IMG/VR virus record: IMGVR_UViG_3300030503_000315 | Coordinates: 124,001 to 188,000 of that record | Direction: 5' to 3' (one strand) | Length of the DNA: 64,000 bases | Shown here: piece after piece, positions 22,806-61,021 of the stretch | How the letters are laid out: the number at the start of each line of letters is the position of its first letter | How positions within the stretch are numbered: position 1 is the stretch's first letter | Notes under the pieces: model-generated | What the model was told of the DNA's origin: nothing | What the model saw: only the letters and a program-made list of their open reading frames with translations | Database searches by the model: none | Made by a program: the position numbers and the translations under genes

Positions 22806-23909
22806 ATGAGTACTCAAGATGTTCAAGACGTTGACTTCAAGGAAGTAACGGAATCAAAGATGATCGATAGCACCAAACAGGAAGTAAAACCAAAGCATCG
22901 AATCCTTCATGTTCAGGTGCAGGGCAATCCCAGTTCGGAAGACTTGTTGAGCACCGCTCAGGCGTTTGAGAAGGCTCTACAATCTGGATCGTCCTCAGTG
23001 GTATCCACGACCCCGAACGTTCAGACGTTCCACATCTATGGCGAAGGTGAAGCTCCGTTCAATGGTGTTCTGGTTCGTGGGGCTATTACCCTCGAAGACA
23101 TCGCAAGGACAATCCATGATGCGGAGATGGCGTACAGCAAGCAAGGCTTCAAATATTGGTTCGATCTTGCGGATGATCGACGCCGCGAGTACGTCAAGTT
23201 GGTTAAGAATGAGCTGCGTGGTATCACAACTACGTCTGACGACCAGGTGAAGAATCAGCTTGTCTATAACATCGTTACCGCATTGAAGTCTTGCCTCCCT
23301 GCTCCGCAACTTACCAACCTTATCCAGGCTAAGGTGTGGAATGGTTCTCAGGATTATGAGAGCGACGATGCTTGGACGACGATCGGGTTCCCTGATCTGA
23401 AGAAGGGTCATGTGTGGATCAACCCTGAAGAATCTCCTGTGGTGTATCGTCACTGCCAGTCTGATTCATATGTCAACTACGATGGTGGAACATCGTTCGT
23501 TACCGTAGATGTACTGGAAGTCGTTCCTTGTACTGGAACCATTGAGGACAAGATCGTTCTTCAATGGAAGCCCAAGGCGTTGATCGAGCACGAAGTTCGT
23601 GAAGCTTTTTCGAAGTCCGAAGAAAGTGCGGACGCTGAATTGCTAGCCCAAGCTAACGAAGCACGCGATGAAGGCTTTGCACCGGATGAAGAAGTACAGG
23701 CACTACAAGATTCATTAGTTTTGTCTGATGAAGATTCCAAACCTGCGGGTGAAGAAGTTCTCAAGCCCTTCAGTGACACTAGCGATGCAGTGGATCAACC
23801 ACAAACTGCTGTTGATACGAATGGTGTAGAACACAAGGTGAATCCTGTTACCGACACCTGGCAGAAAGAATTGAACGTTCAAGGAGAGCAGGATGCGTCT
23901 TCAGTGTAA
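22806..23909 (+). CDS. Hypothetical protein, acidic C-terminus
   Basis: 367 aa ORF. Confidence 0.8.
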   Translation: MSTQDVQDVDFKEVTESKMIDSTKQEVKPKHRILHVQVQGNPSSEDLLSTAQAFEKALQSGSSSVVSTTPNVQTFHIYGEGEAPFNGVLVRGAITLEDIARTIHDAEMAYSKQGFKYWFDLADDRRREYVKLVKNELRGITTTSDDQVKNQLVYNIVTALKSCLPAPQLTNLIQAKVWNGSQDYESDDAWTTIGFPDLKKGHVWINPEESPVVYRHCQSDSYVNYDGGTSFVTVDVLEVVPCTGTIEDKIVLQWKPKALIEHEVREAFSKSEESADAELLAQANEARDEGFAPDEEVQALQDSLVLSDEDSKPAGEEVLKPFSDTSDAVDQPQTAVDTNGVEHKVNPVTDTWQKELNVQGEQDASSV

Positions 23910-25966
23910 AGTCACTTCCTGGAAGGTAGCGGAGTTCGGTGCAGTATCTGGAAACCATTTCCTCCTCGAATTCCAGGCTACCCATCTCGAATGGAAAACC
24001 GTAGTCGTTCCTTTTCCCTCTTCTCCTTCTTCGGCGTTTGAAGAGATGAGGAAGATGTATGAAAAGCACGTCCACACCTCGATGGCTATCCCAGGTCATC
24101 TTCTGACAACCGAAGGAGAAACGCGTGGATTACATTAACAATGCAATAACGTTGGAAGAAATGCAAGTTGAGTATGGTATCCTTCATTCCGATTTGGGAG
24201 AGACGGATCTGTGCGAAATGGTCACCGCAAGGCTGAATGAAGGTTGGGAGCTGCAAGGTGGCGTAGCTTTGATGAGTTTTATGTTACCGCCATCCACTAT
24301 TCCAACGATTCGCTATGCGCAGGCAATCGTTCGTTATGTGCCGTTACCGAAGGAAGATCAACCAGAGCAAATTGAAGCGTAAGAAAACTTAAGGAGTAGT
24401 ATAGCATGCAGAAAAGAATCAAGGTTAGTTCCTTTAACAACACAGTCAAAACTGTTGTAGCAGGCGAGACCGAACGTGAAGTTAAGGTGGGGTGGAAAAA
24501 GATAGATCAGAGTCAGATTTTATTCACTGGAGCACCCACTCTTGGTCGTGTTACGGTTGGGCAGGGCCTTAGCTTCGACAGCACTTACGGTGTGATCGGA
24601 ATCCAAGACAATACTAGTATCACCTCAGCACCTGTTATCTGCAAGGAATATGTTGAGAAAGAAGCGTTCGATCAGTTGAAGATGCAGTGCGACCTCATGA
24701 TGGGACAAATCTCAATGCTTGAAATGGCGCGCCAGCGCTTCGAGATGCTGGAGAGTATATCTGGTGGTTCGTATGTGCTTCAGGAAAAGATCAATAAGAT
24801 CCGTAACCTGGAAACTGAACTACTGAATACTCAACGCAAACTTGAGTGGGACGGCAACAGTGTGATTAATCAACTTCGGGAGGTTCGCGGTGACCAATAT
24901 CGACAAATCTACTAGGCCGAAGGTCAAGGTCACTTCTGTCAATCAGGAAAAGGTTAACAAAGCTTGTGGTGAGATGGTAGATTTCCTTTCGAAGTCTATC
25001 GAATCTTACCTGTCATCCCTACTTGGTTTTTCGGAAGATGAGTTTACAAGGTCGTTAGCTCTCAACATGCTAGCACCTTCGTCTCGGGAACTTGTGGTCG
25101 GTAGTCCTGTTGTCGGGAAAACCTTGGTTGATAATAATCTTAAAGCCATAAACTATTTGACCTACGGTAACCAACTGTGGGTTCAACGTGTGAATCCTGC
25201 GTTCCCGGGCGACATTAACAGCTTTGAACACCAACTGGTTGGTGACGTCATTGAAGACGAAGATTGTGCCAAGGACGAATCTTTCGCCCTGAAACCATAG
25301 GGGTGGGGATGAGTAAGAGAAAGCAGAAGGTACTTCCTCCGGGCATAGTTGCTCAGTCTCAGAAGAACAAATGCCTGGACGGAACTTTCATCGACCACAA
25401 GAAGTACATGAAGTTGTATCGTCACCACACCATGCGGATTATCCGTGACGTTCGCAAGGGCGTGGTGAACGAGGTTGATATGGACAAGCTACAGAACTTC
25501 ATCCAGTTTTCTCTCGCTCTGATGGATCGTGCTAATATGGAGGACATAGACAAGGCATGGCGTAATGCTGAAGCCATGTCCTTCATCCACGCGGACATGG
25601 GAATCGAGATTGTGGAGACCGTGGATGAACGGGAAAACTACGAGGGGATCCTCGACCCAGTGGTTCAAGCGACGGCAACGCAAGAAGGAAAACCAGATGG
25701 CAAACCCTCCCAACCCATTACCACCGAGTAAACAGAATCTGTTGCCGGATTACGCGGTCATCTCCATCGCAAACAAACACTCCGCTGCGTCCCTGTCCGA
25801 CCCATCAAAACCCTCGATCTACACCGAACAGTTCATTGCTGCTATAACAGAAGCTTTGATCGAGGCGGAGATACGCTCAGAAATTCTGATGCAGAATGCT
25901 ACGGCAAGATTTATTTGCGTGTGCGGGCAAAAAGGTCCGCATTCCTGTCAGTACATCAAAACTTAG
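23893..25966 (+). other. Six small hypothetical genes; three begin with the VKV(T/S)S motif
   Basis: ORFs 23893-24138, 24125-24382, 24406-24915, 24890-25300, ~25309-25731, ~25697-25966. Confidence 0.65.
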
Positions 25967-25974
25967 GAACCAAC

Positions 25975-26529
25975 ATGACCCAAGAAATCCCCGCGCACGT
26001 TCAGCGTATGCAAGCTGAATTCTTCGAACTGACGGGCAGGATAGAAAAACTTCTAGACTTCATCCGCAACAATCCTATCTTCCACACCCTCGACGAGGAA
26101 GAGCAAACCGACATGGAATTGCAATGTCACTACATGCAACTGTATAGTTTTCGACTTGAGTCGAGAATTGATCGCGCCAGGTTCAATCTGATAGACGGAA
26201 CAGAGACGGACGATGAGGACGCGAATGAGATCATCGAAAGCTGGGAAAAACCTGTTCCGGATTCCAGGATGCCTGAGTCGTTTGTCTTCGGAGACAACAC
26301 GAAGAACATCGCCAAGATAGTTACTCCAGAGACCATGAAGGCTGCGATGCGCCTGGATGAGATGCAGGAAATGAAACATCCTGACAAAGCTATACCAGAC
26401 TCGTTCAAGATCATAGATGATGGTGAAGTAGCTGGTCATGTTGCCTTAAAAGTAAGTGATCCTACAAAGCTGTGGCCATTTCCTACTGGTTCTCGTGGGT
26501 TTATCGGGAAATCCAAGGATAGTAAATAG
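25975..26529 (+). CDS. crAss001_48-like domain protein
   Basis: PAHVQRMQAE..EL..RI.KL..F.....F..L...EQ..M..Q...M..Y...L..RI pattern. Confidence 0.65.
   Translation: MTQEIPAHVQRMQAEFFELTGRIEKLLDFIRNNPIFHTLDEEEQTDMELQCHYMQLYSFRLESRIDRARFNLIDGTETDDEDANEIIESWEKPVPDSRMPESFVFGDNTKNIAKIVTPETMKAAMRLDEMQEMKHPDKAIPDSFKIIDDGEVAGHVALKVSDPTKLWPFPTGSRGFIGKSKDSK
26521..26528 (+). promoter_or_regulatory. Phage promoter motif (A/G/T)GTAAATA, representative of ~18 copies
   Basis: Minus: 2579, 7523, 11865, 15844; plus: 16036, 18142, 20907, 26521, 26722, 29477, 35548, 38183, 41539, 45057, 45722, 48241, 54501, 61017; these copies lie on the coding strand upstream of gene starts. Confidence 0.75.
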
Positions 26530-26584
26530 TGTTGTCAACAATGACACTAATCCAAACCTGGGCTCACACTCGAGCTTCAGTCAG

Positions 26585-26690
26585 GAATGCCGGTTCATGT
26601 AGACGTTGAAAGCGATGGTGATAGTAGATCGGATGTGAACGCCGGGTCGATCCGGAAAGGTGGGTTCGACTCCCACAATCCATCGTGACA
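26585..26690 (+). ncRNA. Candidate tRNA-like (T-loop) structured RNA
   Basis: Perfect T-arm GTGGG-TTCGACT-CCCAC at 26660-26676, closing helix CGATGG/CCATCG, intergenic between two AGTAAATA motifs; no CCA or canonical anticodon loop. Confidence 0.5.
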
Positions 26691-26850
26691 AAAATTCGTG
26701 GTTCTCTGGATTTTCCAGAATAGTAAATAGTGTGGTAGGGCAGGATGTTGTAGAGGGAAGTATCATGTCTTGTCCGTACAGATTTTTCAAGTAGCACTGG
26801 TGTAACCTTGTTGGTATCATTCACGCAACGACACTACAGAGGGAACTGAA

Positions 26851-28791
26851 ATGTCGAGTATTCTTAATTCTTTCGCATCGGACTTCGACCAATCGCTGAA
26901 CGAAAAGTACAGCGTCCTGGAATATCTGGAAAACTGCCGTACGGACAAATCGTTCTACGCAACGGCAGCGGAACGGATGTTGAAAGCAATCGGTGAACCG
27001 CGCATGCTGGATACGTCGAAAGATGCGCGTCTCGGTCGTATCTTTGACAACCGGACAATCAAGGTGTACCCGGCGTTCGAAGAAGAGTTCTTCGGTATCG
27101 AGGACACAATTGAACGTCTAGTTGGTTTCTTCCGCGCAGCAGCACAGGGTCTGGAAGAACGCAAACAGGTTCTGTACATGCTTGGACCGGTAGGCTCTGC
27201 AAAGTCGAGTCTGGCAGAGAAGTTGAAGTACCTGATGGAACTCAACCCCATCTACGTGCTGAGCTACAAAAATCAGTTGTCCCCGGTGTTCGAATCTCCG
27301 CTCGGCCTCTTCCCGGTTCACAAGTATGGTGAACGTCTGGAAAAGGAATACGGAATTCATCGTCGTTACCTGACGAACCTGATCCCTTCGCCATGGGCTC
27401 TGAAACGTCTGAAGGAAACTAATGGTGATCTGTCTGATTTCAGCGTGGTCAAGATGTACCCGTCCAAGCTGAACCAGCAGGCAATCATGAAGGTCGAACC
27501 GGGGGATGAAAACAATCAGGACATCTCATCCTTGGTTGGTAAGATCAACCTTCGTCGTATCGATGCGCACGACCAGAACGACAGCGATGCATATCTGTAC
27601 TCGGGTGGCCTCTGCCGCTCCAATCAGGGCATGCTCGAATTCGTGGAAATGTTCAAGGCACCTATCAAGGTTCTTCACCCGTTGCTGACGGCGACGCAGG
27701 AAGGTAACTACGTTGGTACCGAAGCGCTTCCTCCTATTCCGTTCAGTGGTGTAGTAGTTGCGCACTCGAACGAAAGCGAATGGGAAACGTTCAAGAACAA
27801 CAAGAACAACGAGGCTTTCCTGGATCGTGTGTCCCTTGTGTCTGTACCGTATTGCAAACGCGTTGATGAAGAAATCAACATCTACAAGAAGATGCTTGGT
27901 GCTTCGTCATTGGCACAGTCGCCGATTGCACCGCAGACCTTGAAGTACCTGGCGCAATGGTCGATCTCTACACGGCTGAAGGAGCCGGAGAATTCCCTGC
28001 TGTTTTCTAAAGTCCGAGTCTACAACGGTGAGAACCTCAAGGACATCGATCCGCGAGCAAAGTCGACGCGTGAGTATCGCGATCACGCAGGTGTAGCTGA
28101 GGGAATGACAGGGATGTCTACCCGCTTCGCATTCAAGATCCTGTCGAAGACATTCAACAACGATGCGGAAGAAGTTGCAGCTGATCCGCTTCAGCTGATG
28201 GTTGTCCTGCAGAATGAGATCAAGCGCGAGCAGATGTCGAAGGAACAGGAAGAGAAGTACGAGTCGTTCGTCAAGGAAATGTCGCAACGTTACCTTGAGG
28301 ATCTGACGAAGGACATCCAGAAGGCATTCATCGAGAATAGCGAAGACTATTGCCAGAACCTGTTCGAACGTTATATCCAGTTGGCAGATGCCTGGTGCCA
28401 GGATTCGACGTTCAAGGACGATAACACCGGTTCGACAATGAACAAGGCAGAGATGGATCAGGAGCTGTCGAAGATCGAAAAGCCGGCGGGTATCGCGAAC
28501 CCGAAGGATTTCCGCCCTGAAGTCGTGCAGTTCGTACTGCGCGTTCAAGCTCGTAATGGTGGCAAGATGCCGCGCTGGAATTCGTATGAAAAGATGAAGC
28601 AGGTCATCGAAAGCAAGATGAGCGCTTCTCTGGACGAACTCCTCCCGGTGATCTCGTTCGAAACGAAGAAGGAAGTGAAGCTGCAGAAGGATCACGACTC
28701 GTTCGTGGAGCGTATGGAGAAGATCGGCTACACCTCACGTCAAGTTCGTCGTGTAGTCGAATGGTTCAGCCGCGCACGCAAGGCTAACTAA
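26851..28791 (+). CDS. prkA: PrkA/YeaG family AAA+ serine protein kinase
   Basis: GLEERKQVLYMLGPVGSAKSSL Walker A; EPGDENNQDISSLVGK; ANPKDFR. Confidence 0.95.
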   Translation: MSSILNSFASDFDQSLNEKYSVLEYLENCRTDKSFYATAAERMLKAIGEPRMLDTSKDARLGRIFDNRTIKVYPAFEEEFFGIEDTIERLVGFFRAAAQGLEERKQVLYMLGPVGSAKSSLAEKLKYLMELNPIYVLSYKNQLSPVFESPLGLFPVHKYGERLEKEYGIHRRYLTNLIPSPWALKRLKETNGDLSDFSVVKMYPSKLNQQAIMKVEPGDENNQDISSLVGKINLRRIDAHDQNDSDAYLYSGGLCRSNQGMLEFVEMFKAPIKVLHPLLTATQEGNYVGTEALPPIPFSGVVVAHSNESEWETFKNNKNNEAFLDRVSLVSVPYCKRVDEEINIYKKMLGASSLAQSPIAPQTLKYLAQWSISTRLKEPENSLLFSKVRVYNGENLKDIDPRAKSTREYRDHAGVAEGMTGMSTRFAFKILSKTFNNDAEEVAADPLQLMVVLQNEIKREQMSKEQEEKYESFVKEMSQRYLEDLTKDIQKAFIENSEDYCQNLFERYIQLADAWCQDSTFKDDNTGSTMNKAEMDQELSKIEKPAGIANPKDFRPEVVQFVLRVQARNGGKMPRWNSYEKMKQVIESKMSASLDELLPVISFETKKEVKLQKDHDSFVERMEKIGYTSRQVRRVVEWFSRARKAN

Positions 28792-28864
28792 GATTGTAGT
28801 TGCACCGGGTAGTTCCCCTGTAGTACCGTGTGAAGTGTAGTACGTAGTCTTGTAAGTTGTGAAG

Positions 28865-28900
28865 GGGGCAGCCTGTTTAAGTTAGGCTGCCCTTTTCCTT
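28865..28900 (+). terminator. Intrinsic terminator
   Basis: GGGCAGCCT/AGGCTGCCC stem followed by T tract. Confidence 0.8.
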
Positions 28901-28928
28901 TTTGTTTTCGAATTTCATAGGTACCACC

Positions 28929-29489
28929 ATGGAAACAATTGATAAGATTTTCAATTGGATGAATCAAGACGGGGCAAGATTCGGAGTAGGAATGTGGATC
29001 ATAGGTGTAGCGTTTGGTCTCTTCCTGTCCTTGATTATCAAGTGGGTCAATCCATGAGTGTTCTTCGCAAAGAAATCTCTCGTCTGAACCATGTTATTGA
29101 GCGCACCGAGCAAGAGATGATTAATCTAGAGGAAGATTTCTGGCAGAATGGTGGCATCTGTTGTCCGGGTTGTGGTGTACCTGGATTCTCAGAGATGGAA
29201 GAGAAGCAAGAGCGTAGGAAAAAGCAACTTAGATATCTTATCAAGAAGTACGAGAAGGACAGTGGGAGGAAATATGAAGATCATCCGGAAGCTCGTAGCC
29301 TGGCCAGCCGCATATTCAATTTTCTTCTTGGGCTTGATCCTGACTAGGTTGGGTTGGTACAAAGGTCAGTGGCATTGGTTTATGGACTTAGCGATGCATA
29401 TCAGGATTGGGGTGGTTGCCCGGGTCCATGGCTTCGCACAGAAGATGTTCATAATGCACGAAAGAACAGGTGATGTAGTAAATATTTGA
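28929..29489 (+). other. Three small genes inserted between prkA and yeaH
   Basis: 28929-29057 (42 aa membrane peptide), 29054-29347 (CCPGC motif), ~29272-29489. Confidence 0.55.
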
Positions 29490-29539
29490 TGGGCGGTATA
29501 AAACCGGGTGACGGGTAGATCGTCACCTCAACTGGAGGG

Positions 29540-30817
29540 TTGAAAATGTTTAGTCGGACTATTGTTGATGCACGACCACAATCGCAGTCTAAGACCTCGG
29601 CAGACCGGCAGAGGTTTGTTCGTCGGGCTAAATCTCAGATTCGTGAAGCAGTTAAGAAGGCAATCTCTACTGGCGATATCAAGTCATTGGAGAAGGGTCG
29701 CATTCGTGTTCCAGTCAAGGACATGAATGAACCCACGTTTGAGAACGACAGGGAATCCGGGTCCCGTGATCGCGTCTACACCGGGAACAAAGAATGGATT
29801 CCAGGTGACACGATTGCACGTCCTGAGGAAGGTGGAGGTAATGGTACTCAAGGATCGGATGATCCAAGCATTGGCAATGATGACTTCGCCTTCATTCTGA
29901 CTCCAGAGGAATTCTACGATATCTTGTTCGAGGATTTGGGTCTTCCTGATCTAATGAAGAAGACGATGAAGGATATCACGAAGGTCACTCGCAAACGCGC
30001 GGGCTTCGTTATCACGGGTAATCCTTCGCAGCTGGATATTCGCCAGACTTACAAGTTCGCATTCGCACGTCACAAGGCATTGGGTCGTCCTTCGAATGTA
30101 GACATCGAAGAAGCTGAAGAGGATCTCAAGGAAGCACAGGAGTGTGGAACACAATTCGATGCAGAACTAGTTGAAGATGCATTGAAGGAAATGAAAATCG
30201 CACAGAAACGTATCCCGCTCATTGATACAATTGATCTGCGATATCGCAACTATCCACCGCGTCCTGAGCCGATCACCAAGGCAGTGATGATTTGCTGTAT
30301 GGATGTTTCTGGGTCGATGGATGAGGATCGAAAGGATCTGGCAAAACGATTCTATCTCTTGCTATATGTCTGGTTGATGAAGCAGTACAATCAAAGGGTT
30401 GATATCGTGTTCATCCGTCATCACACGCGTGCGGAAGAAGTAGACGAACAAAAATTCTTCTACGATCAAGAATCAGGTGGTACAGTCGTAAGTCCAATCT
30501 TTGAACTCGCAGCTAAGATCATCAAAGATCGTTACAATCCTTCTGATTGGAACATCTACATGTGTCATGCATCTGACGGTGACAACTGGACAGATGACAA
30601 CAAGAAGGTTGTCGAGGCATTGGATGGTATGGCGTCTACCTTGCAATACTTTGCATATCTTCAGGTTACGGAAGAAGACGAGGACGAAGGAGATACGTTG
30701 TGGAACGCCTATCAAAAGGTGAGTGAACGACACAACCATATTCGTATGGTGTCCGCGGATGAACCTTCGGAAATCTGGCCGGTGTTTAAAGAGTTGTTCA
30801 CCAAGGATATGGCGTAA
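29540..30817 (+). CDS. yeaH: YeaH/YhbH (DUF444) vWA-like protein
   Basis: RQRFVRR, MDVSGSM, FIRHHT, ESGGT.VS, SDGDNW. Confidence 0.93.
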   Translation: MKMFSRTIVDARPQSQSKTSADRQRFVRRAKSQIREAVKKAISTGDIKSLEKGRIRVPVKDMNEPTFENDRESGSRDRVYTGNKEWIPGDTIARPEEGGGNGTQGSDDPSIGNDDFAFILTPEEFYDILFEDLGLPDLMKKTMKDITKVTRKRAGFVITGNPSQLDIRQTYKFAFARHKALGRPSNVDIEEAEEDLKEAQECGTQFDAELVEDALKEMKIAQKRIPLIDTIDLRYRNYPPRPEPITKAVMICCMDVSGSMDEDRKDLAKRFYLLLYVWLMKQYNQRVDIVFIRHHTRAEEVDEQKFFYDQESGGTVVSPIFELAAKIIKDRYNPSDWNIYMCHASDGDNWTDDNKKVVEALDGMASTLQYFAYLQVTEEDEDEGDTLWNAYQKVSERHNHIRMVSADEPSEIWPVFKELFTKDMA

Positions 30818-30823
30818 GGAGAA

Positions 30824-32347
30824 TTGGAAATGAAATCCGCTATCAAGACAATCAAGCCCGATTACCTGTTCACCACTTCTGAGTGGACATTCGAGATGCT
30901 TGAGAACACCCTTCGTCTTTGTGAAGACATTGGCAAGGAAGAGCTCGGCCTCAAGCTCATGCGTAATCAGGTTGAGATCATCACCAGCGATCAAATGCTT
31001 GAAGCCTACACTTCGGTAGGAATGCCGATTCACTATCATCACTGGTCGAACGGCAAGTCGTATCTTCAGCAAAAGCAAGCGTACAAGGGCGGTAACATGG
31101 GTCTGGCTTATGAGATCGTTATCAATAGCGATCCATGCATCGCCTACTGCATGGAAGAGAACAGCTCTGCTATGCAAACTCTCGTATTGGCCCATGCTTC
31201 GGTTGGACACAACTCAGTTTTCAACATGAATTATCTGTTCAAGCACTGGACGGATGCAACGGCTATTGTCGATTACCTGATCTTTGCGCGCAACTACATT
31301 CGTCAGTGTGAAGAGCGTTATGGTCTGGATGAAGTCGAAGAGATTCTCGACTCAGCTCATGCACTTCGCTACATGTCGTTCGATCGCCGCAAACGTCAGT
31401 CGACTTTGACGGAAGACCAGGAACAAAAGCGTCGCATGGATTTGTTGGAAGCGCTGGAGCGTGAGCGTTCACAGTATGATGATCTCATCCCAGTGGATGA
31501 ACGGGAGGATGAAGCTAAGGACAAGGATCGTGGTGATCTCAAAGAGCCGGAAGAGAACCTCCTGTATTTCCTTGAGAAGAACTCTCCTAATCTGAAGGCG
31601 TGGCAGCGTGAAATCCTTCGGATTGTACGGACAATCCAGCAGTACTTCTACCCGCAGATGCAGACGCAGGTGGTGAATGAAGGATGGGCGACATTCACTC
31701 ACTACTACATTCTCAATCGTCTGTATGAGATGGGAAAGATTACGGAAGGTGCGTTGCTTGAATGCATGACTTCGCATTCGCAGGTCCTTTTTCAACAGCC
31801 AATGAGTCCCAACCTGAATCCGTATGCACTTGGATTTTCTATCTACAAGGATATCAAACGGATGTGCGAGGAACCCACAGATGAAGATCGTGAGTGGTTC
31901 CCTAATCTGGTTGGTAAAGATTGGAAGGAAGAATGCCTGTTCGCCATGATGAACTTCAAGGACGAGTCGTTCATTCTTCAGTACCTTAGCCCAAAGGTTA
32001 TGCGTGACTTCCGCATGTTTGCCTTGACGGATGATGCAGACGAGGATCACTATCTGGTGAATAAGATTCACAACGATCCTGGGTATAAAGAGATTCGTTC
32101 GATGTTGAGTCAGCAGTATCGTATGGAAAACCGCATGCCGAACATGATGGTTGTCCGTGCAGACATGAAAGGCAATCGTCTTCTAACCGTACAGAACAAG
32201 ACGCAGAATAAGATTCTTCTTAAAGACGATCCCGCGAAAGATTCTGTGCAACATCTGGCGTATCTGTGGGGATACGACGTTAGAGTGGAAACCGTGGATG
32301 AGAGTGGTAAGGTCCTGCAATACTACACAGCTGAGGTGGAGAACTAA
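30824..32347 (+). CDS. ycgB: SpoVR/YcgB family protein
   Basis: GMPIHYHHWS.GK, LAYEIVINSDPCIAY, TQVVNEGWATF.HY, NPYALGF. Confidence 0.93.
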   Translation: MEMKSAIKTIKPDYLFTTSEWTFEMLENTLRLCEDIGKEELGLKLMRNQVEIITSDQMLEAYTSVGMPIHYHHWSNGKSYLQQKQAYKGGNMGLAYEIVINSDPCIAYCMEENSSAMQTLVLAHASVGHNSVFNMNYLFKHWTDATAIVDYLIFARNYIRQCEERYGLDEVEEILDSAHALRYMSFDRRKRQSTLTEDQEQKRRMDLLEALERERSQYDDLIPVDEREDEAKDKDRGDLKEPEENLLYFLEKNSPNLKAWQREILRIVRTIQQYFYPQMQTQVVNEGWATFTHYYILNRLYEMGKITEGALLECMTSHSQVLFQQPMSPNLNPYALGFSIYKDIKRMCEEPTDEDREWFPNLVGKDWKEECLFAMMNFKDESFILQYLSPKVMRDFRMFALTDDADEDHYLVNKIHNDPGYKEIRSMLSQQYRMENRMPNMMVVRADMKGNRLLTVQNKTQNKILLKDDPAKDSVQHLAYLWGYDVRVETVDESGKVLQYYTAEVEN

Positions 32348-32555
32348 ATGGGACAAGAATGCAATGATATCCGATGGTCCTTGGATGATATAAAAAGAAC
32401 TGTAGTGAGAATTGAAGAGAGACAAAGAGGACGAAGAGAACAGATGATGGTTAACCTACTAAAGCAGGCTGTGGATAGTAAGGTGGTGCAGGCTGCCCTA
32501 GGTGACACTTGGGTTACTCTAGTCTGCGATTTGCTTAATACCTATTAGGAGTAGA

Positions 32556-33663: not shown

Positions 33664-33664
33664 G

Positions 33665-41430: not shown

Positions 41431-41547
41431 ATGAACTGGCCGATGGCTTTTGCAATTGTTGGAGTAGTAGCTGCAGTGATGTTTGGCTCAGCAGCAAACG
41501 ATTATGTGGATAGCCCAAAGATAGCATGTACGCCGAATAGTAAATAA
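41431..41547 (+). CDS. Small membrane peptide
   Basis: 38 aa MNWPMAFAIVGVVAAVMFG... Confidence 0.5.
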   Translation: MNWPMAFAIVGVVAAVMFGSAANDYVDSPKIACTPNSK

Positions 41548-41625
41548 GTGTTGAAGGATTGTTGAAGGATTGTTGTAGCAAAACATACAGGAACAGGAAG
41601 CGTTATCATCCTCGTTAGCATCCTC

Positions 41626-41853
41626 GCCTTACGTTGGTTCGAATCCAGCCAGGCGCGCCAAGAGTTCTGCTGTATGTATACTTCATAAGATTGACATTAT
41701 CTGATTGAAGGAGAGGGCCGACGACTTCCGACAGCTCGCCCCTCATAATCCAGAAAACCTATTATGTTTCATAGCGAGTATGGAGTATGGTAGAATTCTT
41801 GACGCGCCTGTGACCCGAGAGGATAGGGCCCAGATTTCTAATCTGGTGTAGGC
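41626..41853 (+). tRNA. Circularly permuted tRNA-Arg(TCT)-like module: 3' part 41626-41660, 5' part 41804-41853
   Basis: T-arm + CAGGCGC-G-CCA upstream; GCGCCTG + D-arm + CCAGA-TTTCTAA-TCTGG downstream; acceptor strands perfectly complementary. Confidence 0.8.
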
Positions 41854-41955
41854 AATTATCGTTCTTGTATTACCTGTATGAGTTATCATAAGCAACTGCA
41901 GTATGAATCCCGTCGAGTTGCTGGCACACCCTACTGAATAGAGTGCCTAGCTAAA

Positions 41956-42519
41956 AATCAGAAGTCACGGGTTCGAATCCCGTCTCCGCCTCACTGTGTA
42001 TTATGGTATGACAAGAAAAGAGAAACGAAACTTTATCCGAGCCAATATCCAGAAAATTGGTGAATGCTGGATCTGGCAATTGAAGACGGATAGAGATGGT
42101 TACGGTTGGTATTCCTACAAAGGAAAATTGCGCCGGGCTCATAGATCCTCGTTTCACGCTTTCAAGGGAAAGATTCCAAAAGGTCTTTCTGTCTGTCATA
42201 CCTGCGACAATCCAAGCTGTGTGAGACCAAAACATCTGTTTGCGGGTACTCACAAACAAAACATGGAAGACATGGCAAAGAAGGGAAGATCTAATAAAGG
42301 CCGCCATGTTAATACCGGAGAGGCTCACGGTTATTCCGTTCTGACTGAAGAACTAGTTCTGTACATAAGAAAGGTATGTGCGGGAGGTAAATCACAGAAC
42401 TCTGTTGAAAGAGAACTTGGTTTATCCTCTGGACTTGTTAACAAGGTGGTCAGAAGAAAGCTTTGGACGCACATTTAGTATACAGTGAGGCGGAGTATCT
42501 CAGTGGTAGAGGTCTGATT
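41956..42519 (+). tRNA. Circularly permuted Cys-like tRNA module split at the anticodon loop: 3' half 41956-41993, 5' half 42489-42519
   Basis: AA-TCAGA-AGTC-ACGGG-TTCGAAT-CCCGT-CTCCGCC-T upstream; GGCGGAG-TA-TCTC-AGTGGTA-GAGG-TCTGA-TT downstream. Confidence 0.75.
42008..42478 (+). CDS. HNH homing endonuclease
   Basis: CWIW...GYG...AHR....F...IP.GL.VCHTCDNP.CVRP.HL..GT...N..D; C-terminal HTH-like segment. Confidence 0.93.
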   Translation: MTRKEKRNFIRANIQKIGECWIWQLKTDRDGYGWYSYKGKLRRAHRSSFHAFKGKIPKGLSVCHTCDNPSCVRPKHLFAGTHKQNMEDMAKKGRSNKGRHVNTGEAHGYSVLTEELVLYIRKVCAGGKSQNSVERELGLSSGLVNKVVRRKLWTHI

Positions 42520-48245: not shown

Positions 48246-48277
48246 ATAAGGGTATGTAGTTCATAGAAGGATAAGCA

Positions 48278-50602: not shown

Positions 50603-50603
50603 T

Positions 50604-53736: not shown

Positions 53737-53745
53737 GAGTTTAGA

Positions 53746-54509: not shown

Positions 54510-54553
54510 TACGCACGGTTGCGCAAACCTGTTAATAAAACACTTCCTAGGAA

Positions 54554-55750: not shown

Positions 55751-55790
55751 GGATCACAACAAATAAAAGGAGCCTACAGGAGCGAATCCC

Positions 55791-56858
55791 GTGGGCTCTA
55801 TCCATATTGGTGGTAGAAGGAGTCTGGTAATGCAGAGTGTATCTCGTGGTGATTACGTCGTGGCACACGACGGATCAGGAAACAAAAAGAAGTCATTTCT
55901 TTTCAAGGTAGAGTCGATTAGCAAAGGTATAGCGGAGGGGACGATAGAGAAGGATTCACATATCAAGTCGCGGAGATTCACAATAGAGGCACCAGTCAAG
56001 AATGTGATAGTCAACCTGGGTGCGGATCCTTATCCGGGAAAAGCATATGGACATGACCTATCCACAATCTATCGTGGACGGAAGACTCATGATTTCTTTG
56101 GCCCAACCTATTGGATGTACTCTCCTAGCAACGAGATTAAAACCGAGTTGTTCAAAGCGATGGATAGGGCGGCGAAGGTATTGAAGACCCATCAGCTAGA
56201 GTTCGTCGTGAATCCCAATACATGCATCTGGGAAATCCAACCGAACAACGGTGAGCTTTATGCGGGAATGTATAAGCGCATGAAGAACCCGGAGAAGAGC
56301 CCGCATCGTTTGCAGATTCGCCCGGAGGTCCTTCCCTCAACCGAGTTCCCCTATGTTATCTACCATGAGCTTGGGCATCATCTTCACTATGAACATGTCA
56401 CTGGTAAGAAATTGAATGCGCAATGGATTGAATTGTTCAACACTACCATTGCAGTCACTTCGATAAAGAAAGAGAAAAGTCAGGAACTTCTTGATGCCCT
56501 TCTAGCGCAGCAGGACGATCTACCGTCTACCTTCAAGTCCAATTTGAGCGAAGAGGATACGTTGGTCTATAAGACTATCCTGAAGACTATAACAACGCAA
56601 CACTCAGTGACCGTCAAGGAATTGGATATCCTGTTCGAAGCAGACTACAAGGATGAGATCAAAGGCGTGTGGCCAGTTCGTGGATTCTCTAAGAAGGATC
56701 TTGCACCTGTTGTTTCGGACTACGCCTGCAAGAACTATAGAGAGTTATTCGCTGAATCCTTCGCGTTCCGTATGTCAGGAAAGAAGCTGCCAAAGGCAGT
56801 AGATGCTCTTCTAGATAAATCCATTAGCTATGCCAAAGCAAATAGGGAGAGGAATTGA
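55791..56858 (+). CDS. Zincin-like metallopeptidase domain protein
   Basis: YHELGHH plus YA..N..E.FAE.F. Confidence 0.7.
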   Translation: MGSIHIGGRRSLVMQSVSRGDYVVAHDGSGNKKKSFLFKVESISKGIAEGTIEKDSHIKSRRFTIEAPVKNVIVNLGADPYPGKAYGHDLSTIYRGRKTHDFFGPTYWMYSPSNEIKTELFKAMDRAAKVLKTHQLEFVVNPNTCIWEIQPNNGELYAGMYKRMKNPEKSPHRLQIRPEVLPSTEFPYVIYHELGHHLHYEHVTGKKLNAQWIELFNTTIAVTSIKKEKSQELLDALLAQQDDLPSTFKSNLSEEDTLVYKTILKTITTQHSVTVKELDILFEADYKDEIKGVWPVRGFSKKDLAPVVSDYACKNYRELFAESFAFRMSGKKLPKAVDALLDKSISYAKANRERN

Positions 56859-57765
56859 TGACTAAACAAGGTGCACCCAATATCTTTACCGCTGAAGATC
56901 TACGCGAATGGAATACTTCTCGGAAGAATGCAAATAACAGGTGGGTCCAAGCACGTCCACTAGGGTGGCAGGGTTGGAAACTTTGGTATCGCCTGAAGTT
57001 AGCGTGGGGTGTATTCACTGCTAAATACGATGTAGTCAAATGGGATGAATCATGAGAGCCAATGTCAAAGTATCAAGCAATAAAGATAACGTTATCAAAG
57101 AATTAGATTTCGATGCAATCATCGAGAATTTCAGGAAGGCTCACATTCCAATCCCACTAAAGCTGTATATGGCAGCCGGTGGCATAGATTTTCAATACCT
57201 TGAACATTCTCTTCTGCAGGAAAAGAATATTAAGGACGTAGCAACGAAAGAAGACCTTTCCTTCTTCGCAACACAGTACAACGGATAAACCATGCGCCCC
57301 ACAGTTAGAGTAACAAGTCACGGTCACCCAAAGAATCAGATTGCTACTACCTCCTTTGTCCACACTGCACTTCGAGGTGAAACAAGGTATTTTGCACATA
57401 TAGATGAGCTAGCATTCTTCCCTACAGCGGAGTCGAAAAGTTTTTGGAAAATGGCTGATCTAGATCTCACAGCACGGAAACTTAGATTGCTCGGGATAAG
57501 TCCTTGTTTTCTTTCCAATGAACCCGAAACCGAAGCACCGCATTACTGGTGAAAAATGAGTAAAGAGATTCGACGCGCATTGAAAGTTAAGTTGGTTGGT
57601 ACGTCGACCACCCTAGAGCTGACCAAGTTTGCCACACCCGCGGTTGAAAAGCAGTTCATTCACTTTGACGAATTGCCAGATGGAACGTGGCGACTCCTCT
57701 TCAACTTGGAGGGGCATGACGTCCAGGACATTGAATCTTTTGAGTTCCTTAGAGATGACGATTGA
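56855..57765 (+). other. Four small genes; two begin with the VKV(T/S)S motif
   Basis: 56855-57055, 57052-57288, 57292-57552, 57556-57765. Confidence 0.65.
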
Positions 57766-59797
57766 TCTTAATATCGAAGCAGTACCTCGCCTCGTTGAAG
57801 ATTCATTCCTGAATGCTTTGATGATAATGGCTGATACCAAGGGCGTAGTGTCGATAGACATGTTCGATACCTTGGTGACTCGCCGAGTGACTAGTCCGGT
57901 AGATGTATTCGCTGAGGTGGAGAAGCGCCTAGGTCTAAAGTATGGTTCCAAGGTAGAAGGGTTTGCCAAAGAGCGTGAGACTGTTGAACGCCAACTCTAC
58001 TCTGAACGTGGGGATACTGGCCATGAAGACGTCACGCTTGACATGATCTATTCTAGACTTACCTCTTACCCTTTAGAGGCTAAGCAGGTTGAGATGGATG
58101 CCGAGTTGGATGTCCTTGTTGCCTCGAAAGATCTTCTTAAGTTCACTCGACAACTCAACGCCCTCGATAAGCCATGGATAGTCGTGTCAGATATGTATCT
58201 GCCTGGCGAATTCCTAGCCAAGGCGCTGACCAAGTGTGGGTTCTCCGGATGGAAAAAGATTTATGTATCTGGAGACCTAGGAGCTACTAAGAATTCAGGA
58301 TCGATTTGGAAGTTGCATATTGGATGGTCCTATCCGTTAAATACTATTCTTCATGTCGGAGATAATGCACACTCTGATCTGAATATCCCATTGAGCTTAG
58401 GTATCGCAGTTCTTCCGTATAATCGGTTGAGGACAGTTACCCGAACTGGAGCACAGTTAGATCCCCATCTTCTTCCTTACTCTTATCTCAACCGTGATCT
58501 AGAGTTGAACATGATAGAGGACGCGACTGAGGATGACCAATGGCAACACCTCGGGCGTACGATGGGCGCGATCTTCATCAGTGCATTTATCAAGTGGATC
58601 GTCGAGAGGGCTAAGGCTACTGGGATAAAGCGTCTATACTTTTGCGCACGAGACGGTCACCTGTTGCACCGGGTGTGGAATTTACCTGGATCGGCTATAA
58701 GGTTCCCAGGTATAGAAGCCCGTTACCTAGATATCTCCCGGGCTCCACTGCAAATAGCGCGCGGGTACCTTGAATCGAATCCGAATTGGTTGTGTCCGCA
58801 GTTGATTGACTTCCTCATCATGGTGGATGAGAAAACTACGGTGGAGACTATCCAACGAAGAATTTCATCGGAGACGAATTCATATCTCGATCAGGATCTT
58901 CGAAAGGAATTCCCGACCATTATAATGGATAGACCTTATGGTGAGGCGATGGCAGCCTTGAGGGTAATCCTAAGTCGTTACTCTGAATGGATTTACGAGG
59001 CTATAAGACCCCTGGCTGAACGAACAAAATCTTATCTTCTCCAGGAAGGACTCGGAGAAGATATCAAGAGTGCTATCGTTGATACCGGATGGCATGCCAA
59101 TCAACAACGCTGCATAAGTACGATTGTTGATCGCCAGATCTCCGGCCTGTACCTTGGACTGTGGCGTAAAGCTTTGGGTGCAATTCCTAAAGCAGGATTC
59201 GCAGAGGGTGCGTACTCATCTCCTTTTGCGCACCAAGGAAAGGAAGAAGTGTCAGAGCTAATGATGTCAGTCAACATTATCGAATCATTGTTCACCTCAT
59301 GTGAAGGTTCGACATTTGACTACAAGCTTGACACCCGTTCCCGATGGATAGCAGTAACGAGAACGAACGATCTTGAGTATCAACAATACTGTACGAAGGT
59401 AAAGTGGTTCCAGCAGGGTGTGATGGATGTCGTTAGTGAGATTTTCAATGGGAGGAAGTATGCTACACTCTCACTTGAAGACTGCACCATCGAGGCAGGA
59501 CGATCGGCATTGAGTTATGTTTGCATGGGACCAACCTGGGATCAGCTACAGTTGATAGGAGGTCTGAATCATGCGTTCCTCTCAGATCACGATAACACTC
59601 AGACTCTAATAGATCAACAGTGGCCAGTAACAGACGATCAAGCAAACGCAGTATTGGCAACAAAGGGATGGGTGTTTGGAGTTCTCCTTAACTGGTATGC
59701 GATGGCTCCGATTCCGCAGAAGGGATGGATTCGTCGCATGGTCAATGAGAGGCTTGGCAACCTTAACGAAAGACGACTACGACCATTTTGGAAATGA
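57755..59797 (+). CDS. HAD-superfamily hydrolase of the polysaccharide-cluster type
   Basis: SIDMFDTLVTR, VSDMYL, HVGDN..SD, FCARDG, VDTGW; start trimmed to MTIDL. Confidence 0.85.
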   Translation: MTIDLNIEAVPRLVEDSFLNALMIMADTKGVVSIDMFDTLVTRRVTSPVDVFAEVEKRLGLKYGSKVEGFAKERETVERQLYSERGDTGHEDVTLDMIYSRLTSYPLEAKQVEMDAELDVLVASKDLLKFTRQLNALDKPWIVVSDMYLPGEFLAKALTKCGFSGWKKIYVSGDLGATKNSGSIWKLHIGWSYPLNTILHVGDNAHSDLNIPLSLGIAVLPYNRLRTVTRTGAQLDPHLLPYSYLNRDLELNMIEDATEDDQWQHLGRTMGAIFISAFIKWIVERAKATGIKRLYFCARDGHLLHRVWNLPGSAIRFPGIEARYLDISRAPLQIARGYLESNPNWLCPQLIDFLIMVDEKTTVETIQRRISSETNSYLDQDLRKEFPTIIMDRPYGEAMAALRVILSRYSEWIYEAIRPLAERTKSYLLQEGLGEDIKSAIVDTGWHANQQRCISTIVDRQISGLYLGLWRKALGAIPKAGFAEGAYSSPFAHQGKEEVSELMMSVNIIESLFTSCEGSTFDYKLDTRSRWIAVTRTNDLEYQQYCTKVKWFQQGVMDVVSEIFNGRKYATLSLEDCTIEAGRSALSYVCMGPTWDQLQLIGGLNHAFLSDHDNTQTLIDQQWPVTDDQANAVLATKGWVFGVLLNWYAMAPIPQKGWIRRMVNERLGNLNERRLRPFWK

Positions 59798-60825
59798 CAA
59801 TGGAACTTTATCCGACCTCAATGAGGAAGGTCTCGCCAGATGGCATGGATGGTGGAAAGGTTGGCATCATAATGCGAACGCAGAATCGCCCTATCCTGTT
59901 ATCTCGCGCACTGGCTTCAGTGTTGCATCAGAAGTACACCAACTGGAATCTCTTCCTCATCAACGATGGTGGCTCTATAGGTGATCTGGAAGCCGTAGTC
60001 GATCCCGTACGTTCTTCCTTGACCAATCGTTTGACGGTGATTCATCACGGAACGGCTAAGGGAATGGAAGCGGCAAGCAACGCAGGGCTGCAGAAAGCTT
60101 TTGATAGTCAGTGTCAATACATTTGCGTACATGATGACGACGATGCCTGGGACCCTGACTTCCTTTTCGAGACGGTGAAGTTCCTCGAAGATGATCCGAC
60201 GATGGCTGCTGTGGTGACAGAGAAGGTGATCATTAGGGAACGTATAGAAGGCGAATACGTCATCGAAGAAGGACAGGAACCAGGATTCGTCCCACCTCGT
60301 ATCACCTTCGCCAATCTGTGTGAGGCTAATCAGTTCCCACCTATCTGTTTGCTATTTCGTTCTTCCGTTGCCAAAAAGATAGGGATGTTCAATGCATCCC
60401 TGCCTGTACTTGGAGACTGGGACTATCACCTGAGAATTTTATTGGAAGGCGATATCGGAGTTATCCCGAAGAAGTTAGCTTACTATCATCACCGTCGTGC
60501 ATCAACTGATGCATACGGCAACACAGTAACTGCAGGTGCTGAAAGGCATGAGACGTATGGTGGATTGTTCATCAACTCTATGGTGCGACAACTAGCTCAG
60601 GAAAATCCTGGCTACATTGGGATACTCCATATCGTCCTGAAACGTCAGGCAGATTTGCATGTCAAGATGCGCGAACGGATCGATTACTATGAGAAGGCGC
60701 TACTTGATCTGCGTCCTATCATCCAGGATCAGAACAAGAAGGTGACGGATCTCACACAGAAGATTGACGCTCTACTGGGTTCACAACCTTGGTGGAAATT
60801 TTGGGACAAGAACAAAGGGAATTGA
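59788..60825 (+). CDS. GT2 glycosyltransferase
   Basis: RAL.SVL.Q.Y....INDGG, HDDDD, DWDY.LR; C-terminal coiled coil and PWWKFW. Confidence 0.9.
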   Translation: MEMTMELYPTSMRKVSPDGMDGGKVGIIMRTQNRPILLSRALASVLHQKYTNWNLFLINDGGSIGDLEAVVDPVRSSLTNRLTVIHHGTAKGMEAASNAGLQKAFDSQCQYICVHDDDDAWDPDFLFETVKFLEDDPTMAAVVTEKVIIRERIEGEYVIEEGQEPGFVPPRITFANLCEANQFPPICLLFRSSVAKKIGMFNASLPVLGDWDYHLRILLEGDIGVIPKKLAYYHHRRASTDAYGNTVTAGAERHETYGGLFINSMVRQLAQENPGYIGILHIVLKRQADLHVKMRERIDYYEKALLDLRPIIQDQNKKVTDLTQKIDALLGSQPWWKFWDKNKGN

Positions 60826-60826
60826 A

Positions 60827-61021
60827 ATGCGAGCTAAAGTTAAGGTAACAAGTAGTATCAAAACAAATCCAATGGACATTCTTGGGATGTATCCCGGTGC
60901 AACAGAAAAGTTCACCATCACGTTCCCCGCATCCCTGTGGCCTAACGTTACCGTACTGAAAGTCTACATGCCAGACGGAACTATCCTATCTCTTGATAAT
61001 GCACAAGTCTCAATGCAGTAA
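60827..61021 (+). CDS. Small protein with N-terminal VKVTS motif
   Basis: MRAKVKVTSS. Confidence 0.6.
   Translation: MRAKVKVTSSIKTNPMDILGMYPGATEKFTITFPASLWPNVTVLKVYMPDGTILSLDNAQVSMQ

What the first reader, a model, noticed from the sequence alone, without database searches (positions are those of the whole stretch)
23893..61021. Shared N-terminal MRxxVKV(T/S)S motif on six unrelated small proteins
Seen: MRLQCKVTSW (23893), MQKRIKVSSF (24406), ...RPKVKVTSV (24890), MRANVKVSSN (57052), MRPTVRVTSH (57292), MRAKVKVTSS (60827). The downstream sequences are unrelated and the genes lie in clusters >30 kb apart. Established analogy: T4 internal proteins carry a short N-terminal capsid targeting sequence. 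Inference: a second addressing tag (beta-strand addition to a common partner, packaging signal, or Ser/Thr phospho-site for the phage PrkA).
Basis: partly seen in the sequence, partly recalled or inferred. Interest (0 to 1): 0.6.

Follow-up and report, generated by a model that had tools for sequence, protein, structure and literature searches.

The report
Capsid-protein N-terminal tag on small proteins
An uncultured jumbo phage related to Ralstonia phage phiRSL1 puts the same nine-residue N-terminal peptide, which matches the start of its own major capsid protein, on about 15 otherwise unrelated small proteins; this looks like an addressing tag of the kind phage T4 uses to load proteins into its head.

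Summary
All six window ORFs exist with the stated N-termini. The whole 215-kb genome holds 15 such ORFs, consensus M-R-x-K-V-K-V-T-S. In a six-frame scan, 11 motif hits had ATG four codons upstream, against 0.4 expected. Selection acts on the peptide, not the DNA: third codon positions are free, the invariant Ser uses both TCN and AGY codons, and conservation stops at codon 9.

New points:
- The tag matches the N-terminus of the phage's own major capsid protein (MVRQKVKVRASK). That N-terminus is conserved across the phiRSL1 clade and is the only other N-terminus in the proteome that fits the tag profile.
- Relatives outside a narrow subclade have the capsid N-terminus but no tagged ORFs.
- In one tagged family, seven of eight homologues keep the tag at 20-29% overall identity, and one distant homologue lacks it.
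- AlphaFold2 places the tag as a flexible extension before the fold.
- Several tagged ORFs contain diverged pieces of capsid, portal, terminase and tail-fibre proteins.

Best reading (confidence about 0.45) is a capsid-addressing tag copied from the capsid protein's N-arm, analogous to the T4 capsid targeting sequence (CTS). This is untested: there is no virion proteome, no partner and no cleavage site.

The parts
23893..24138 (+). Tagged ORF, 81 aa, tag MRLQCKVTS (codons 1-9 = 23893-23919). Overlaps the stop of the upstream 367-aa gene by 17 nt.
   Evidence: same gene call in JGI/ENA/Logan contigs; tag profile 23.7 bits; no Pfam or PHROG family
24406..24915 (+). Tagged ORF, 169 aa, tag MQKRIKVSS (weakest member, 18.3 bits). 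AAGGAG Shine-Dalgarno site upstream.
   Evidence: ORFan: only itself among 5.8 billion clustered proteins in the word-indexed search; same gene call in other contigs
24890..25300 (+). Tagged ORF, 136 aa, GTG start with GGGAGG Shine-Dalgarno site. The tag RPKVKVTSV lies at residues 9-17 (24914-24940), directly after the stop codon of the upstream ORF in another frame. This shows the tag need not be at the very N-terminus.
   Evidence: gene callers use the GTG start; 26.8 bits
57052..57288 (+). Tagged ORF, 78 aa, tag MRANVKVSS, ATGA overlap with the upstream gene. Residues 31-75 resemble the phage's portal protein, residues 463-510.
   Evidence: portal-like piece: blastp E 1.8e-4; portal identified
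57292..57552 (+). Tagged ORF, 86 aa, tag MRPTVRVTS. The body is a patchwork resembling the tail-fibre IATTxFV motif (aa 3-29), terminase large subunit 315-333 (aa 25-43) and portal 335-364 (aa 50-77).
   Evidence: fragment matches E 0.002-0.005 each; PHROG terminase hint; parent genes identified
60827..61021 (+). Tagged ORF, 64 aa, tag MRAKVKVTS followed by SIKTNPM, which resembles the capsid protein's ASKTPM. Starts 2 nt after the glycosyltransferase gene.
   Evidence: 26.3 bits; comparison with the capsid protein N-terminus

Best explanation
The nonapeptide M-R-x-K-V-K-V-T-S is a portable, protein-level addressing tag. It was copied from the extreme N-terminus (N-arm tip) of the phage's own major capsid protein (MCP). 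Because it presents the same peptide as the MCP, a tagged protein is proposed to dock to whatever receives the MCP N-terminus during procapsid assembly (scaffold or core, the maturation protease, or a neighbouring MCP). The tagged protein would then be carried into the head, as the T4 CTS carries diverse internal proteins into the scaffolding core.

Shown: the tag is real, N-terminal, selected as a peptide, separable from the fold, matches the MCP N-terminus, and sits on diverse accessory genes inserted into a conserved backbone.

Inferred: that the tag binds an assembly partner, that the proteins end up in the capsid, and any cleavage or ejection.
For: 1. Enrichment and position: 11 observed against 0.4 expected, and almost never internal.

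2. Peptide-level selection. Information content is periodic with free third positions. The invariant Ser is split 7 TCN: 7 AGY (the 15th member has Gly there). Conservation ends at codon 9, and only a Shine-Dalgarno site is conserved upstream. The Lys AAG bias equals genome usage.

3. Match to the MCP. The G000 MCP (genome 38258-37170, minus strand) starts MVRQKVKVRASKTP. Clade relatives start MRTKVKVRASKTP, MRNKVEVRAAKTP or MVRQKVKIAASKKP. Among 354 predicted proteins, the MCP is the only non-member N-terminus that fits the tag profile (11.9 bits against 1.1 for the next). Member 8735 (MRPRVKVRSSKSS) is the best match to the MCP N-terminus in the whole six-frame genome.

4. The MCP N-terminus is an add-on to the capsid fold. 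The PHROG head-protein profile starts at residue 31, and the solved phage G capsid protein aligns from residue 77.

5. Direction of copying. phiRSL1 and two complete relatives (217 and 245 kb) have the MCP N-terminus but no tagged ORFs.

6. Neighbouring tagged ORFs carry internal MCP pieces. ORF 9146 aa 13-41 match MCP 265-293 at 69% identity, with 15 of 20 conserved codons synonymous-different, so the piece is old and under purifying selection.

7. Conservation across lineages. In the family upstream of DnaB, seven of eight homologues from at least three phage lineages keep MRPK[VIT][KRN][VI] at 20-29% overall identity. A distant homologue in an unrelated 33%-GC contig lacks it.

8. AlphaFold2 of that family (pLDDT 81) puts residues 1-14 in coil, with pLDDT below 50 at residues 6-12, ahead of the folded domain.

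9. Tagged ORFs are insertions between genes that are adjacent in phiRSL1. This resembles the variable internal-protein loci of T-even phages, whose products share only the CTS (PMC3012670).

10. Weak: the head maturation protease has a tag-like LRAKNIRISSS at residues 21-31, just before its catalytic domain.
Against: - No virion proteome, no N-terminal sequencing and no expression data.
- No partner was identified, and the MCP model was too poor to use (pLDDT 43).
- No shared cleavage motif follows the tag.
- Most tagged genes sit in replication-type (probably early or middle) operons and are translationally coupled to genes such as DnaB, not in the head module.
- The tagged proteins are not uniformly basic like T4 internal proteins (pI 4.9-10.2).
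- The MCP register differs by one residue, and positions 8-9 differ (RA-S in the MCP, TS in the tag).
- The protease match is at noise level on its own and poorly conserved in relatives.
- Cultured relatives lack the system, so no experimental literature bears on it.
Confidence: 0.45

Rival explanations
1. Assembly modulator or decoy. The tag and the capsid, portal and terminase-like pieces let these mini-proteins occupy the docking sites of the real virion proteins. They could tune or time head assembly, poison assembly of co-infecting relatives, or bind host sensors that recognise capsid, portal or terminase proteins. They are not themselves cargo.
For: Tag matches the MCP N-terminus. Tagged or neighbouring small ORFs contain diverged MCP, portal, terminase and tail-fibre segments: 8 hits against 0.4 per shuffled replicate. 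The MCP-like piece is under purifying selection. The genes sit in early-type operons.
Against: Only 4 of 15 tagged ORFs show such pieces, and most matches are marginal (E 1e-4 to 5e-3). No defence or sensor context is present in the data. Fragments that bind own-assembly sites should be harmful to the phage itself.
Confidence: 0.15
2. Inherited start module. The ORFs descend from duplicated 5' ends of the MCP gene, recombined with other sequence. The first nine codons are kept because they give a proven, efficient translation start for short, translationally coupled genes, not because the peptide addresses anything.
For: MCP-derived pieces lie in the 8.3-9.3 kb cluster. Many tagged ORFs lack a good Shine-Dalgarno site and overlap the upstream stop codon. 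N-terminal codons are known to affect protein yield (general knowledge).
Against: An expression effect should constrain RNA sequence or structure. Instead third positions are free and Ser switches between TCN and AGY codons. Specific residues (V5, V7, S9) are held across 15 paralogues and several lineages. The tag also works 8 residues into an ORF (24890) and one residue in (MCP).
Confidence: 0.12
3. Recognition site for an enzyme: a degron or cleavage site for the head maturation protease or another phage or host protease, or a Ser/Thr modification site (for example by the phage PrkA-type kinase) shared by the MCP and the small proteins.
For: Flexible, exposed N-terminal peptide. Invariant Ser with Lys at -3 and usually Thr/Ser at -1. 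The phage encodes PrkA plus its two usual partner genes, an HExxH peptidase directly upstream of two tagged ORFs and a head maturation protease.
Against: No evidence links any of these enzymes to the tag. phiRSL1-type relatives have the same enzymes and the same MCP N-terminus without tagged ORFs. In the MCP the Ser is shifted by one position relative to V-K-V.
Confidence: 0.1
4. RNA-level operator: the first 27 nt are the binding site of a translational repressor or activator (like T4 RegA sites that overlap start codons), so the shared peptide is a by-product.
For: The position is fixed at the start codon of many small genes. RegA-type regulation of many early mRNAs is known in T4 (general knowledge).
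Against: Strict three-base periodicity of conservation, free wobble positions, Ser encoded by two unrelated codon families, and the tag sitting 24 nt downstream of the start in ORF 24890.
Confidence: 0.04
5. Chance or annotation artefact.
For: The motif is short, and the ORFs are small ORFans.
Against: 11 observed against 0.4 expected. Independent gene calls agree. The tag is conserved in relatives' orthologues.
Confidence: 0.01

Closest known systems
Capsid targeting sequence (CTS) of phage T4 internal proteins (IPI, IPII, IPIII and the variable internal-protein loci of T-even phages)
   Same: A roughly 10-residue N-terminal peptide is the only thing shared by a diverse set of small accessory proteins encoded in variable loci outside the head gene cluster. 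[quoted passage not shown]
   Different: The sequence is unrelated to the T4 CTS as I recall it. Here the tag matches the N-terminus of the major capsid protein itself, which is not reported for T4. No cleavage site, packaging or ejection is shown. The phage belongs to the phiRSL1 lineage, not the T4 lineage. Many tagged genes are embedded in replication operons.
N-arm or N-terminal propeptide of HK97-fold major capsid proteins (for example the T4 gp23 N-terminal piece)
   Same: The tag's model, the first ~10 residues of the MCP, lies in an N-terminal extension ahead of the conserved capsid fold. It is conserved across the clade, as expected for a segment with an assembly role.
   Different: Whether this MCP's N-terminus is cleaved, faces the interior, or binds a scaffold is unknown. 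Copying of an MCP N-arm tip onto unrelated proteins is, to my knowledge, not described.
Repeat-initiated genes of Burkholderia jumbo phage Matilda (same broad cluster as BcepSauron and phiRSL1)
   Same: Small hypothetical proteins with a conserved N-terminus and variable C-terminus in a related jumbo phage (bioRxiv 10.64898/2026.10.21.760668).
   Different: In Matilda the shared N-terminus comes from genes that start inside long DNA repeats. Here there is no DNA repeat: only codon positions 1-2 of nine codons are conserved.

Membership tests
T4-type capsid targeting sequence system | Short N-terminal peptide shared by otherwise unrelated small proteins | tested here: met
   15 ORFs; only two tandem pairs are homologous beyond the tag
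T4-type capsid targeting sequence system | Genes lie in variable accessory loci rather than in the conserved core | tested here: met
   Tagged ORFs are insertions between genes that are adjacent in phiRSL1. Copy number differs between relatives: one, two or three ORFs upstream of DnaB.
T4-type capsid targeting sequence system | Tag is a separable module outside the folded domain | tested here: met
   AlphaFold2: residues 1-14 coil with low pLDDT. Homologue P0007 lacks the tag.
T4-type capsid targeting sequence system | Tagged proteins are present inside proheads or virions | not testable with these tools
   Uncultured phage; no proteome available
T4-type capsid targeting sequence system | Tag is removed by the prohead protease at a consensus site | tested here: inconclusive
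   A head maturation protease exists (phrog_18299), but no common motif follows the tag, and Peptidase_S77/S78 Pfam models do not match the genome.
T4-type capsid targeting sequence system | Sequence similarity to the T4 CTS | not tested
   From memory the T4 CTS is a different, acidic-ended peptide.
Derivative of the major capsid protein N-terminus | Tag matches the MCP N-terminus better than any other N-terminus in the proteome | tested here: met
   MCP 11.9 bits, next non-member 1.1 bits, among 354 proteins. ORF 8735 is the top non-self hit to the MCP N-terminal 10-mer.
Derivative of the major capsid protein N-terminus | The MCP N-terminus predates the tagged ORFs | tested here: met
   The MCP N-terminus is conserved in 28 clade members. 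Tagged ORFs are absent from phiRSL1, G001, G003 and, at pattern level, from BcepSauron, BCSR5, Motura, G002, G004 and G005.
Derivative of the major capsid protein N-terminus | Other MCP-derived sequence lies in the same ORFs | tested here: met
   ORF 9146 against MCP 265-293, E 3e-13. ORF 8914 against MCP 76-116 and 335-358. This applies only to the 8.3-9.3 kb cluster.

The most novel reading that the evidence does not exclude
A subclade of phiRSL1-like jumbo phages has built a family of mini-proteins. Each fuses the N-arm tip of the major capsid protein to new or recycled sequence, including conserved pieces of capsid, portal, terminase and tail-fibre proteins. The phage uses capsid-protein mimicry to load these proteins into the head, or onto assembly intermediates, as injected effectors or decoys against host systems that sense those same virion proteins. 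This would be an independently evolved analogue of the T4 CTS/internal-protein arsenal, in which both the address and part of the cargo derive from structural genes.
Probability: 0.2. Interest if true: 0.8.

Novelty: new variant of a known kind. Interest (0 to 1): 0.65.

Why it matters
If the tag addresses proteins to the capsid, it would be a second, independently evolved capsid-targeting system, in a jumbo-phage lineage with no genetic model. It would also have a traceable origin, because the address is a copy of the capsid protein's own N-terminus. That makes three things directly testable: how cargo is recruited into large capsids, what the capsid N-arm tip binds, and how new accessory genes are assembled from pieces of structural genes. 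In practice, a nine-residue tag could be used to load foreign proteins into phiRSL1-type capsids, as the T4 CTS is used. Even if the function differs, a peptide held constant across 15 unrelated proteins and several lineages marks a strong interaction that has not been characterised.

Tried and rejected
- Family assignment: Pfam and PHROGs give nothing for the ten tagged proteins scanned.
- Word-indexed protein search with the 169-aa and 114-aa tagged proteins returned only themselves. The third search was not spent.
- Near-identical DNA in cultured phages: none.
- Population variation: all other contigs of this phage are 99.98-100% identical, so no polymorphism test was possible.
- IMG/VR scans. 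MRPKVKVT[S] gave 1 hit. MRPKVKV gave 22 hits, most of them unrelated or internal to other ORFs. The three large contigs among them show no expansion. The tag is therefore not a general phage motif. The window's own record is excluded from these scans.
- DNA repeat or RNA operator: rejected on codon-position periodicity and Ser codon switching.
- SD-like AAGGT inside the tag: the AAG preference equals genome codon usage.
- A G001 hit, MRRRVKIRLSK, is internal to a 312-aa protein orthologous to the G000 6479-7411 gene, so it is chance.
- ORFs at genome 14411(-) and 36844(-) match the pattern but lie on the wrong strand or inside another gene, so they were excluded.
- MCP structure: the 28-sequence alignment gave pLDDT 43, which is unusable. 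I therefore did not send a complex prediction.
- Prohead protease Pfam models S77 and S78: no match. A PHROG protease family matched instead.
- Fold search of the DnaB-upstream family: only weak similarity to gp25 / sheath-domain / IraD-like folds (E 0.04 or worse in PDB).
- Literature on phiRSL1 capsid processing: nothing usable in the held library.
Full report
**What the window is.** The window is bases 124,001-188,000 of a 215,315-bp IMG/VR virus record (CheckV completeness 91%). Its DNA polymerase is 54% identical to that of Ralstonia phage phiRSL1, and its nearest cultured relatives are BcepSauron/Saruman, BCSR5 and Motura. Its major capsid protein (MCP) is 82% identical to phiRSL1 ORF136. 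It is therefore an uncultured jumbo myovirus of the phiRSL1 lineage.

**Check of the observation.**
- Five start at ATG. The sixth (24890) starts at a GTG with a good Shine-Dalgarno site and carries the motif at residues 9-17.
- Metagenome gene callers on ten independent contigs make the same calls for the first three.
- A six-frame scan of the whole genome for [VILC][KR][VI][ST]S, with no start codon required, found 42 hits. Eleven had Met exactly four residues upstream. Thirty second-order Markov genomes gave a mean of 0.40 and never more than 1.
- Relaxing position 8 and searching by similarity added more members. After removing two wrong-strand or overlapping ORFs the set is 15 ORFs of 59-169 aa. 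They lie in six places: genome 8.7-9.3 kb (three in a row), 22.6-23.3 kb (two), 70.6-71.9 kb (three), 147.9-149.3 kb (three; window 23.9-25.3 kb), 181.0-185.0 kb (three; window 57.0-61.0 kb) and 204.0 kb (one).
- A profile of the tag separates members (18-27 bits) from everything else in six frames (14.8 bits or less).
- Only the tandem pairs 22607/22948 and 70866/71113 are homologous beyond the tag.
- Pfam and PHROGs recognise none of the ten tagged proteins scanned, the six window ORFs among them.

**Peptide or nucleic acid?** I aligned the 15 genes on the start codon.
- Conservation is confined to codon positions 1 and 2 of codons 1-9.
- Third positions carry 0.08-0.44 bits, except the Lys-6 wobble. 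Its G preference equals the genome's 66% AAG usage.
- The invariant Ser at codon 9 is TCN in seven genes and AGY in seven; the fifteenth member has Gly there.
- Conservation stops abruptly at nucleotide 27, and upstream only a Shine-Dalgarno signal is seen.

This is selection on the peptide. A DNA repeat, a recombination site or an RNA operator is very unlikely.

**The tag matches the capsid protein's N-terminus.** A tblastn of the tagged proteins against phiRSL1 unexpectedly hit its major head protein.
- The G000 MCP starts MVRQKVKVRASKTPMVAATEYK. Twenty-eight clade members start MRTKVKVRASKTP, MRNKVEVRAAKTP, MVRQKVKIAASKKP and similar.
- Scored with the tag profile, the MCP is the only non-member N-terminus in 354 predicted proteins that fits (11.9 bits against 1.1 for the next).
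- In the reverse direction, ORF 8735 (MRPRVKVRSSKSS) is the best six-frame match to the MCP's N-terminal ten residues. ORF 60827 continues SIKTNPM after the tag, where the MCP has ASKTPM.
- The MCP N-terminus lies ahead of the conserved capsid fold. The PHROG profile begins at residue 31 and the solved phage G capsid protein aligns from residue 77.

**Distribution.**
- phiRSL1 (whole genome scanned at protein level) has the MCP N-terminus but no tagged ORF. So do two complete uncultured relatives, G001 (217 kb) and G003 (245 kb).
- Pattern scans of BcepSauron, BCSR5, Motura and three more large contigs were also negative.
- A nearer relative, two 41-kb contigs with DnaB 84% identical, has at least two tagged ORFs: MSRPKVKVVS on a 104-aa ORFan, and MRPKTKIRS at the position orthologous to 22607/22948.
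- A third lineage (L127) has three tandem tagged ORFs upstream of DnaB: MRPKIKVSG, MRPKVKVHS and MRPKVKVYS. A fourth protein, P0005, starts MRPKVNVTS.
- Across IMG/VR the exact heptapeptide MRPKVKV is rare and occurs mostly in unrelated contexts.

The MCP N-terminus is therefore old. The tagged ORFs are a later invention of one subclade, expanded most in this phage.

**The tag is a separable, flexible module.**
- In the DnaB-upstream family, overall identity is 20-29%, yet seven of eight homologues keep the tag. The eighth, from an unrelated 33%-GC contig, begins where the fold begins.
- AlphaFold2 on this alignment gives a confident two-helix, three-strand domain from residue 16 (mean pLDDT 81). 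Residues 1-14 are coil, with pLDDT below 50 at residues 6-12.
- The tag tolerates one extra residue in front (the MCP and the relative's MS-RPKVKVVS) and eight residues in front (ORF 24890). It is therefore read as an internal-capable linear peptide, not through the free N-terminus.

**Genomic setting.** Tagged ORFs are insertions into a backbone collinear with phiRSL1. For example, 22607/22948 lie between a gene (PHROG 'DNA polymerase' family) and DnaB, and those two genes are about 200 bp apart in phiRSL1. Most are translationally coupled to their upstream neighbour. In the window they lie next to a PrkA operon, a putative HExxH peptidase, a family-2 glycosyltransferase and a QueD-like gene.

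**Pieces of structural genes.**
- Four tagged ORFs and at least two untagged small ORFs contain diverged segments of virion proteins:
  - ORF 9146 matches MCP 265-293 (69% identity, E 3e-13).
  - ORF 8914 matches MCP 76-116 and 335-358.
  - ORF 57052 (window) matches portal 463-510.
  - ORF 57292 (window) matches a tail-fibre motif, terminase 315-333 and portal 335-364.
  - Untagged ORFs 8358-8738 and 25055-25297 match MCP 265-299 and portal 281-338 (E 6e-12).
- Shuffled tagged proteins give 0.4 hits per replicate against 8 observed.
- In the ORF 9146 piece, 15 of 20 conserved residues use different codons. The similarity is therefore old and maintained by selection.
- The marginal matches (E around 1e-3) should be treated as leads.

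**Interpretation.**
- The best-supported reading is a capsid-addressing tag derived from the MCP's own N-arm tip. It is analogous to the T4 CTS, which is the only feature shared by the very diverse T-even internal proteins (PMC3012670).
- A weak extra hint is a tag-like LRAKNIRISSS just before the catalytic domain of the head maturation protease. At 12 bits it is not significant alone.
- What is missing is any direct evidence of packaging, cleavage or a receptor. The early-operon location and mixed charge of the proteins also differ from T4 internal proteins. I therefore put this reading at about 0.45.

**Limits.**
- The gene set for the whole genome comes from my own crude caller plus ORF listing.
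- Five tagged ORFs were missed or truncated by that caller and were recovered by pattern.
- The MCP model was unusable, so I sent no complex prediction.
- The window's own record is excluded from collection scans, so collection-wide counts describe other phages only.

Noticed in passing
window 57052-57552; genome (G000) 8358-9343 and 25055-25297: Small ORFs in accessory regions carry diverged segments of the phage's own capsid, portal, terminase and tail-fibre proteins. Examples: untagged ORF 25055-25297 against portal 281-338 (E 6e-12); ORF 8358-8738 and its paralogue 7975-8361 against the MCP 265-299 region. The MCP-like piece in ORF 9146 is under purifying selection.
   Followed up: partly
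G000 41454-42386 (minus strand), outside the window: The head maturation protease (phrog_18299, E 6e-83) has a tag-like LRAKNIRISSS at residues 21-31, just before the protease domain. It scores 12 bits only and is poorly conserved in relatives.
   Followed up: partly
window 26851-32347: Three-gene block: PrkA (AAA_PrkA + PrkA domains), a protein with a weak PHROG 'sporulation protein' match (phrog_10856), and a third protein of unknown function (phrog_35217). The arrangement resembles the bacterial prkA-yeaH-ycgB operon (from memory).
   Followed up: no
window 55791-56858: A 355-aa putative HExxH metallopeptidase (phrog_17197, conserved in phiRSL1) lies directly upstream of, and in one operon with, two tagged ORFs. 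Pfam does not recognise it.
   Followed up: no
window 24125-24382 and 25975-26529: A DUF1737 protein and a crAss001_48-related protein (PF21825, labelled Sequestin in the precomputed table) sit among the tagged ORFs of the first cluster.
   Followed up: no
window 59800-62855: A family-2 glycosyltransferase, a QueD-like 6-pyruvoyl-tetrahydropterin synthase and an unannotated 437-aa protein flank the tagged ORF at 60827. This may be a DNA-modification (7-deazaguanine or sugar) module.
   Followed up: no
window about 16000: GC skew changes sign from negative to positive, and the coding strand switches from minus to plus. This is a divergent transcription boundary or a possible replication origin.
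   Followed up: no
L093 30-1875 (IMGVR_UViG_3300013296_000029): In the nearer relative, a 350-aa ORF (function not checked) is inserted in a gene whose C-terminal ~50 residues are duplicated on both sides of it (…EFWKCLKPKFNPIISD… occurs twice). This looks like a homing-endonuclease insertion scar.
   Followed up: no
G000 22607-22951 (model m86b6073b1bbd): The DnaB-upstream tagged family folds as two helices plus a three-stranded sheet. It shows weak similarity to gp25 / tail-sheath handshake / IraD-like domains (Foldseek E 0.04-0.3, TM about 0.5).
   Followed up: partly
window 57556-57765: The 69-aa ORF following the two tagged ORFs has a degenerate tag-like ALKVKLVGTS at residues 8-17. It falls below the profile threshold.
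   Followed up: no
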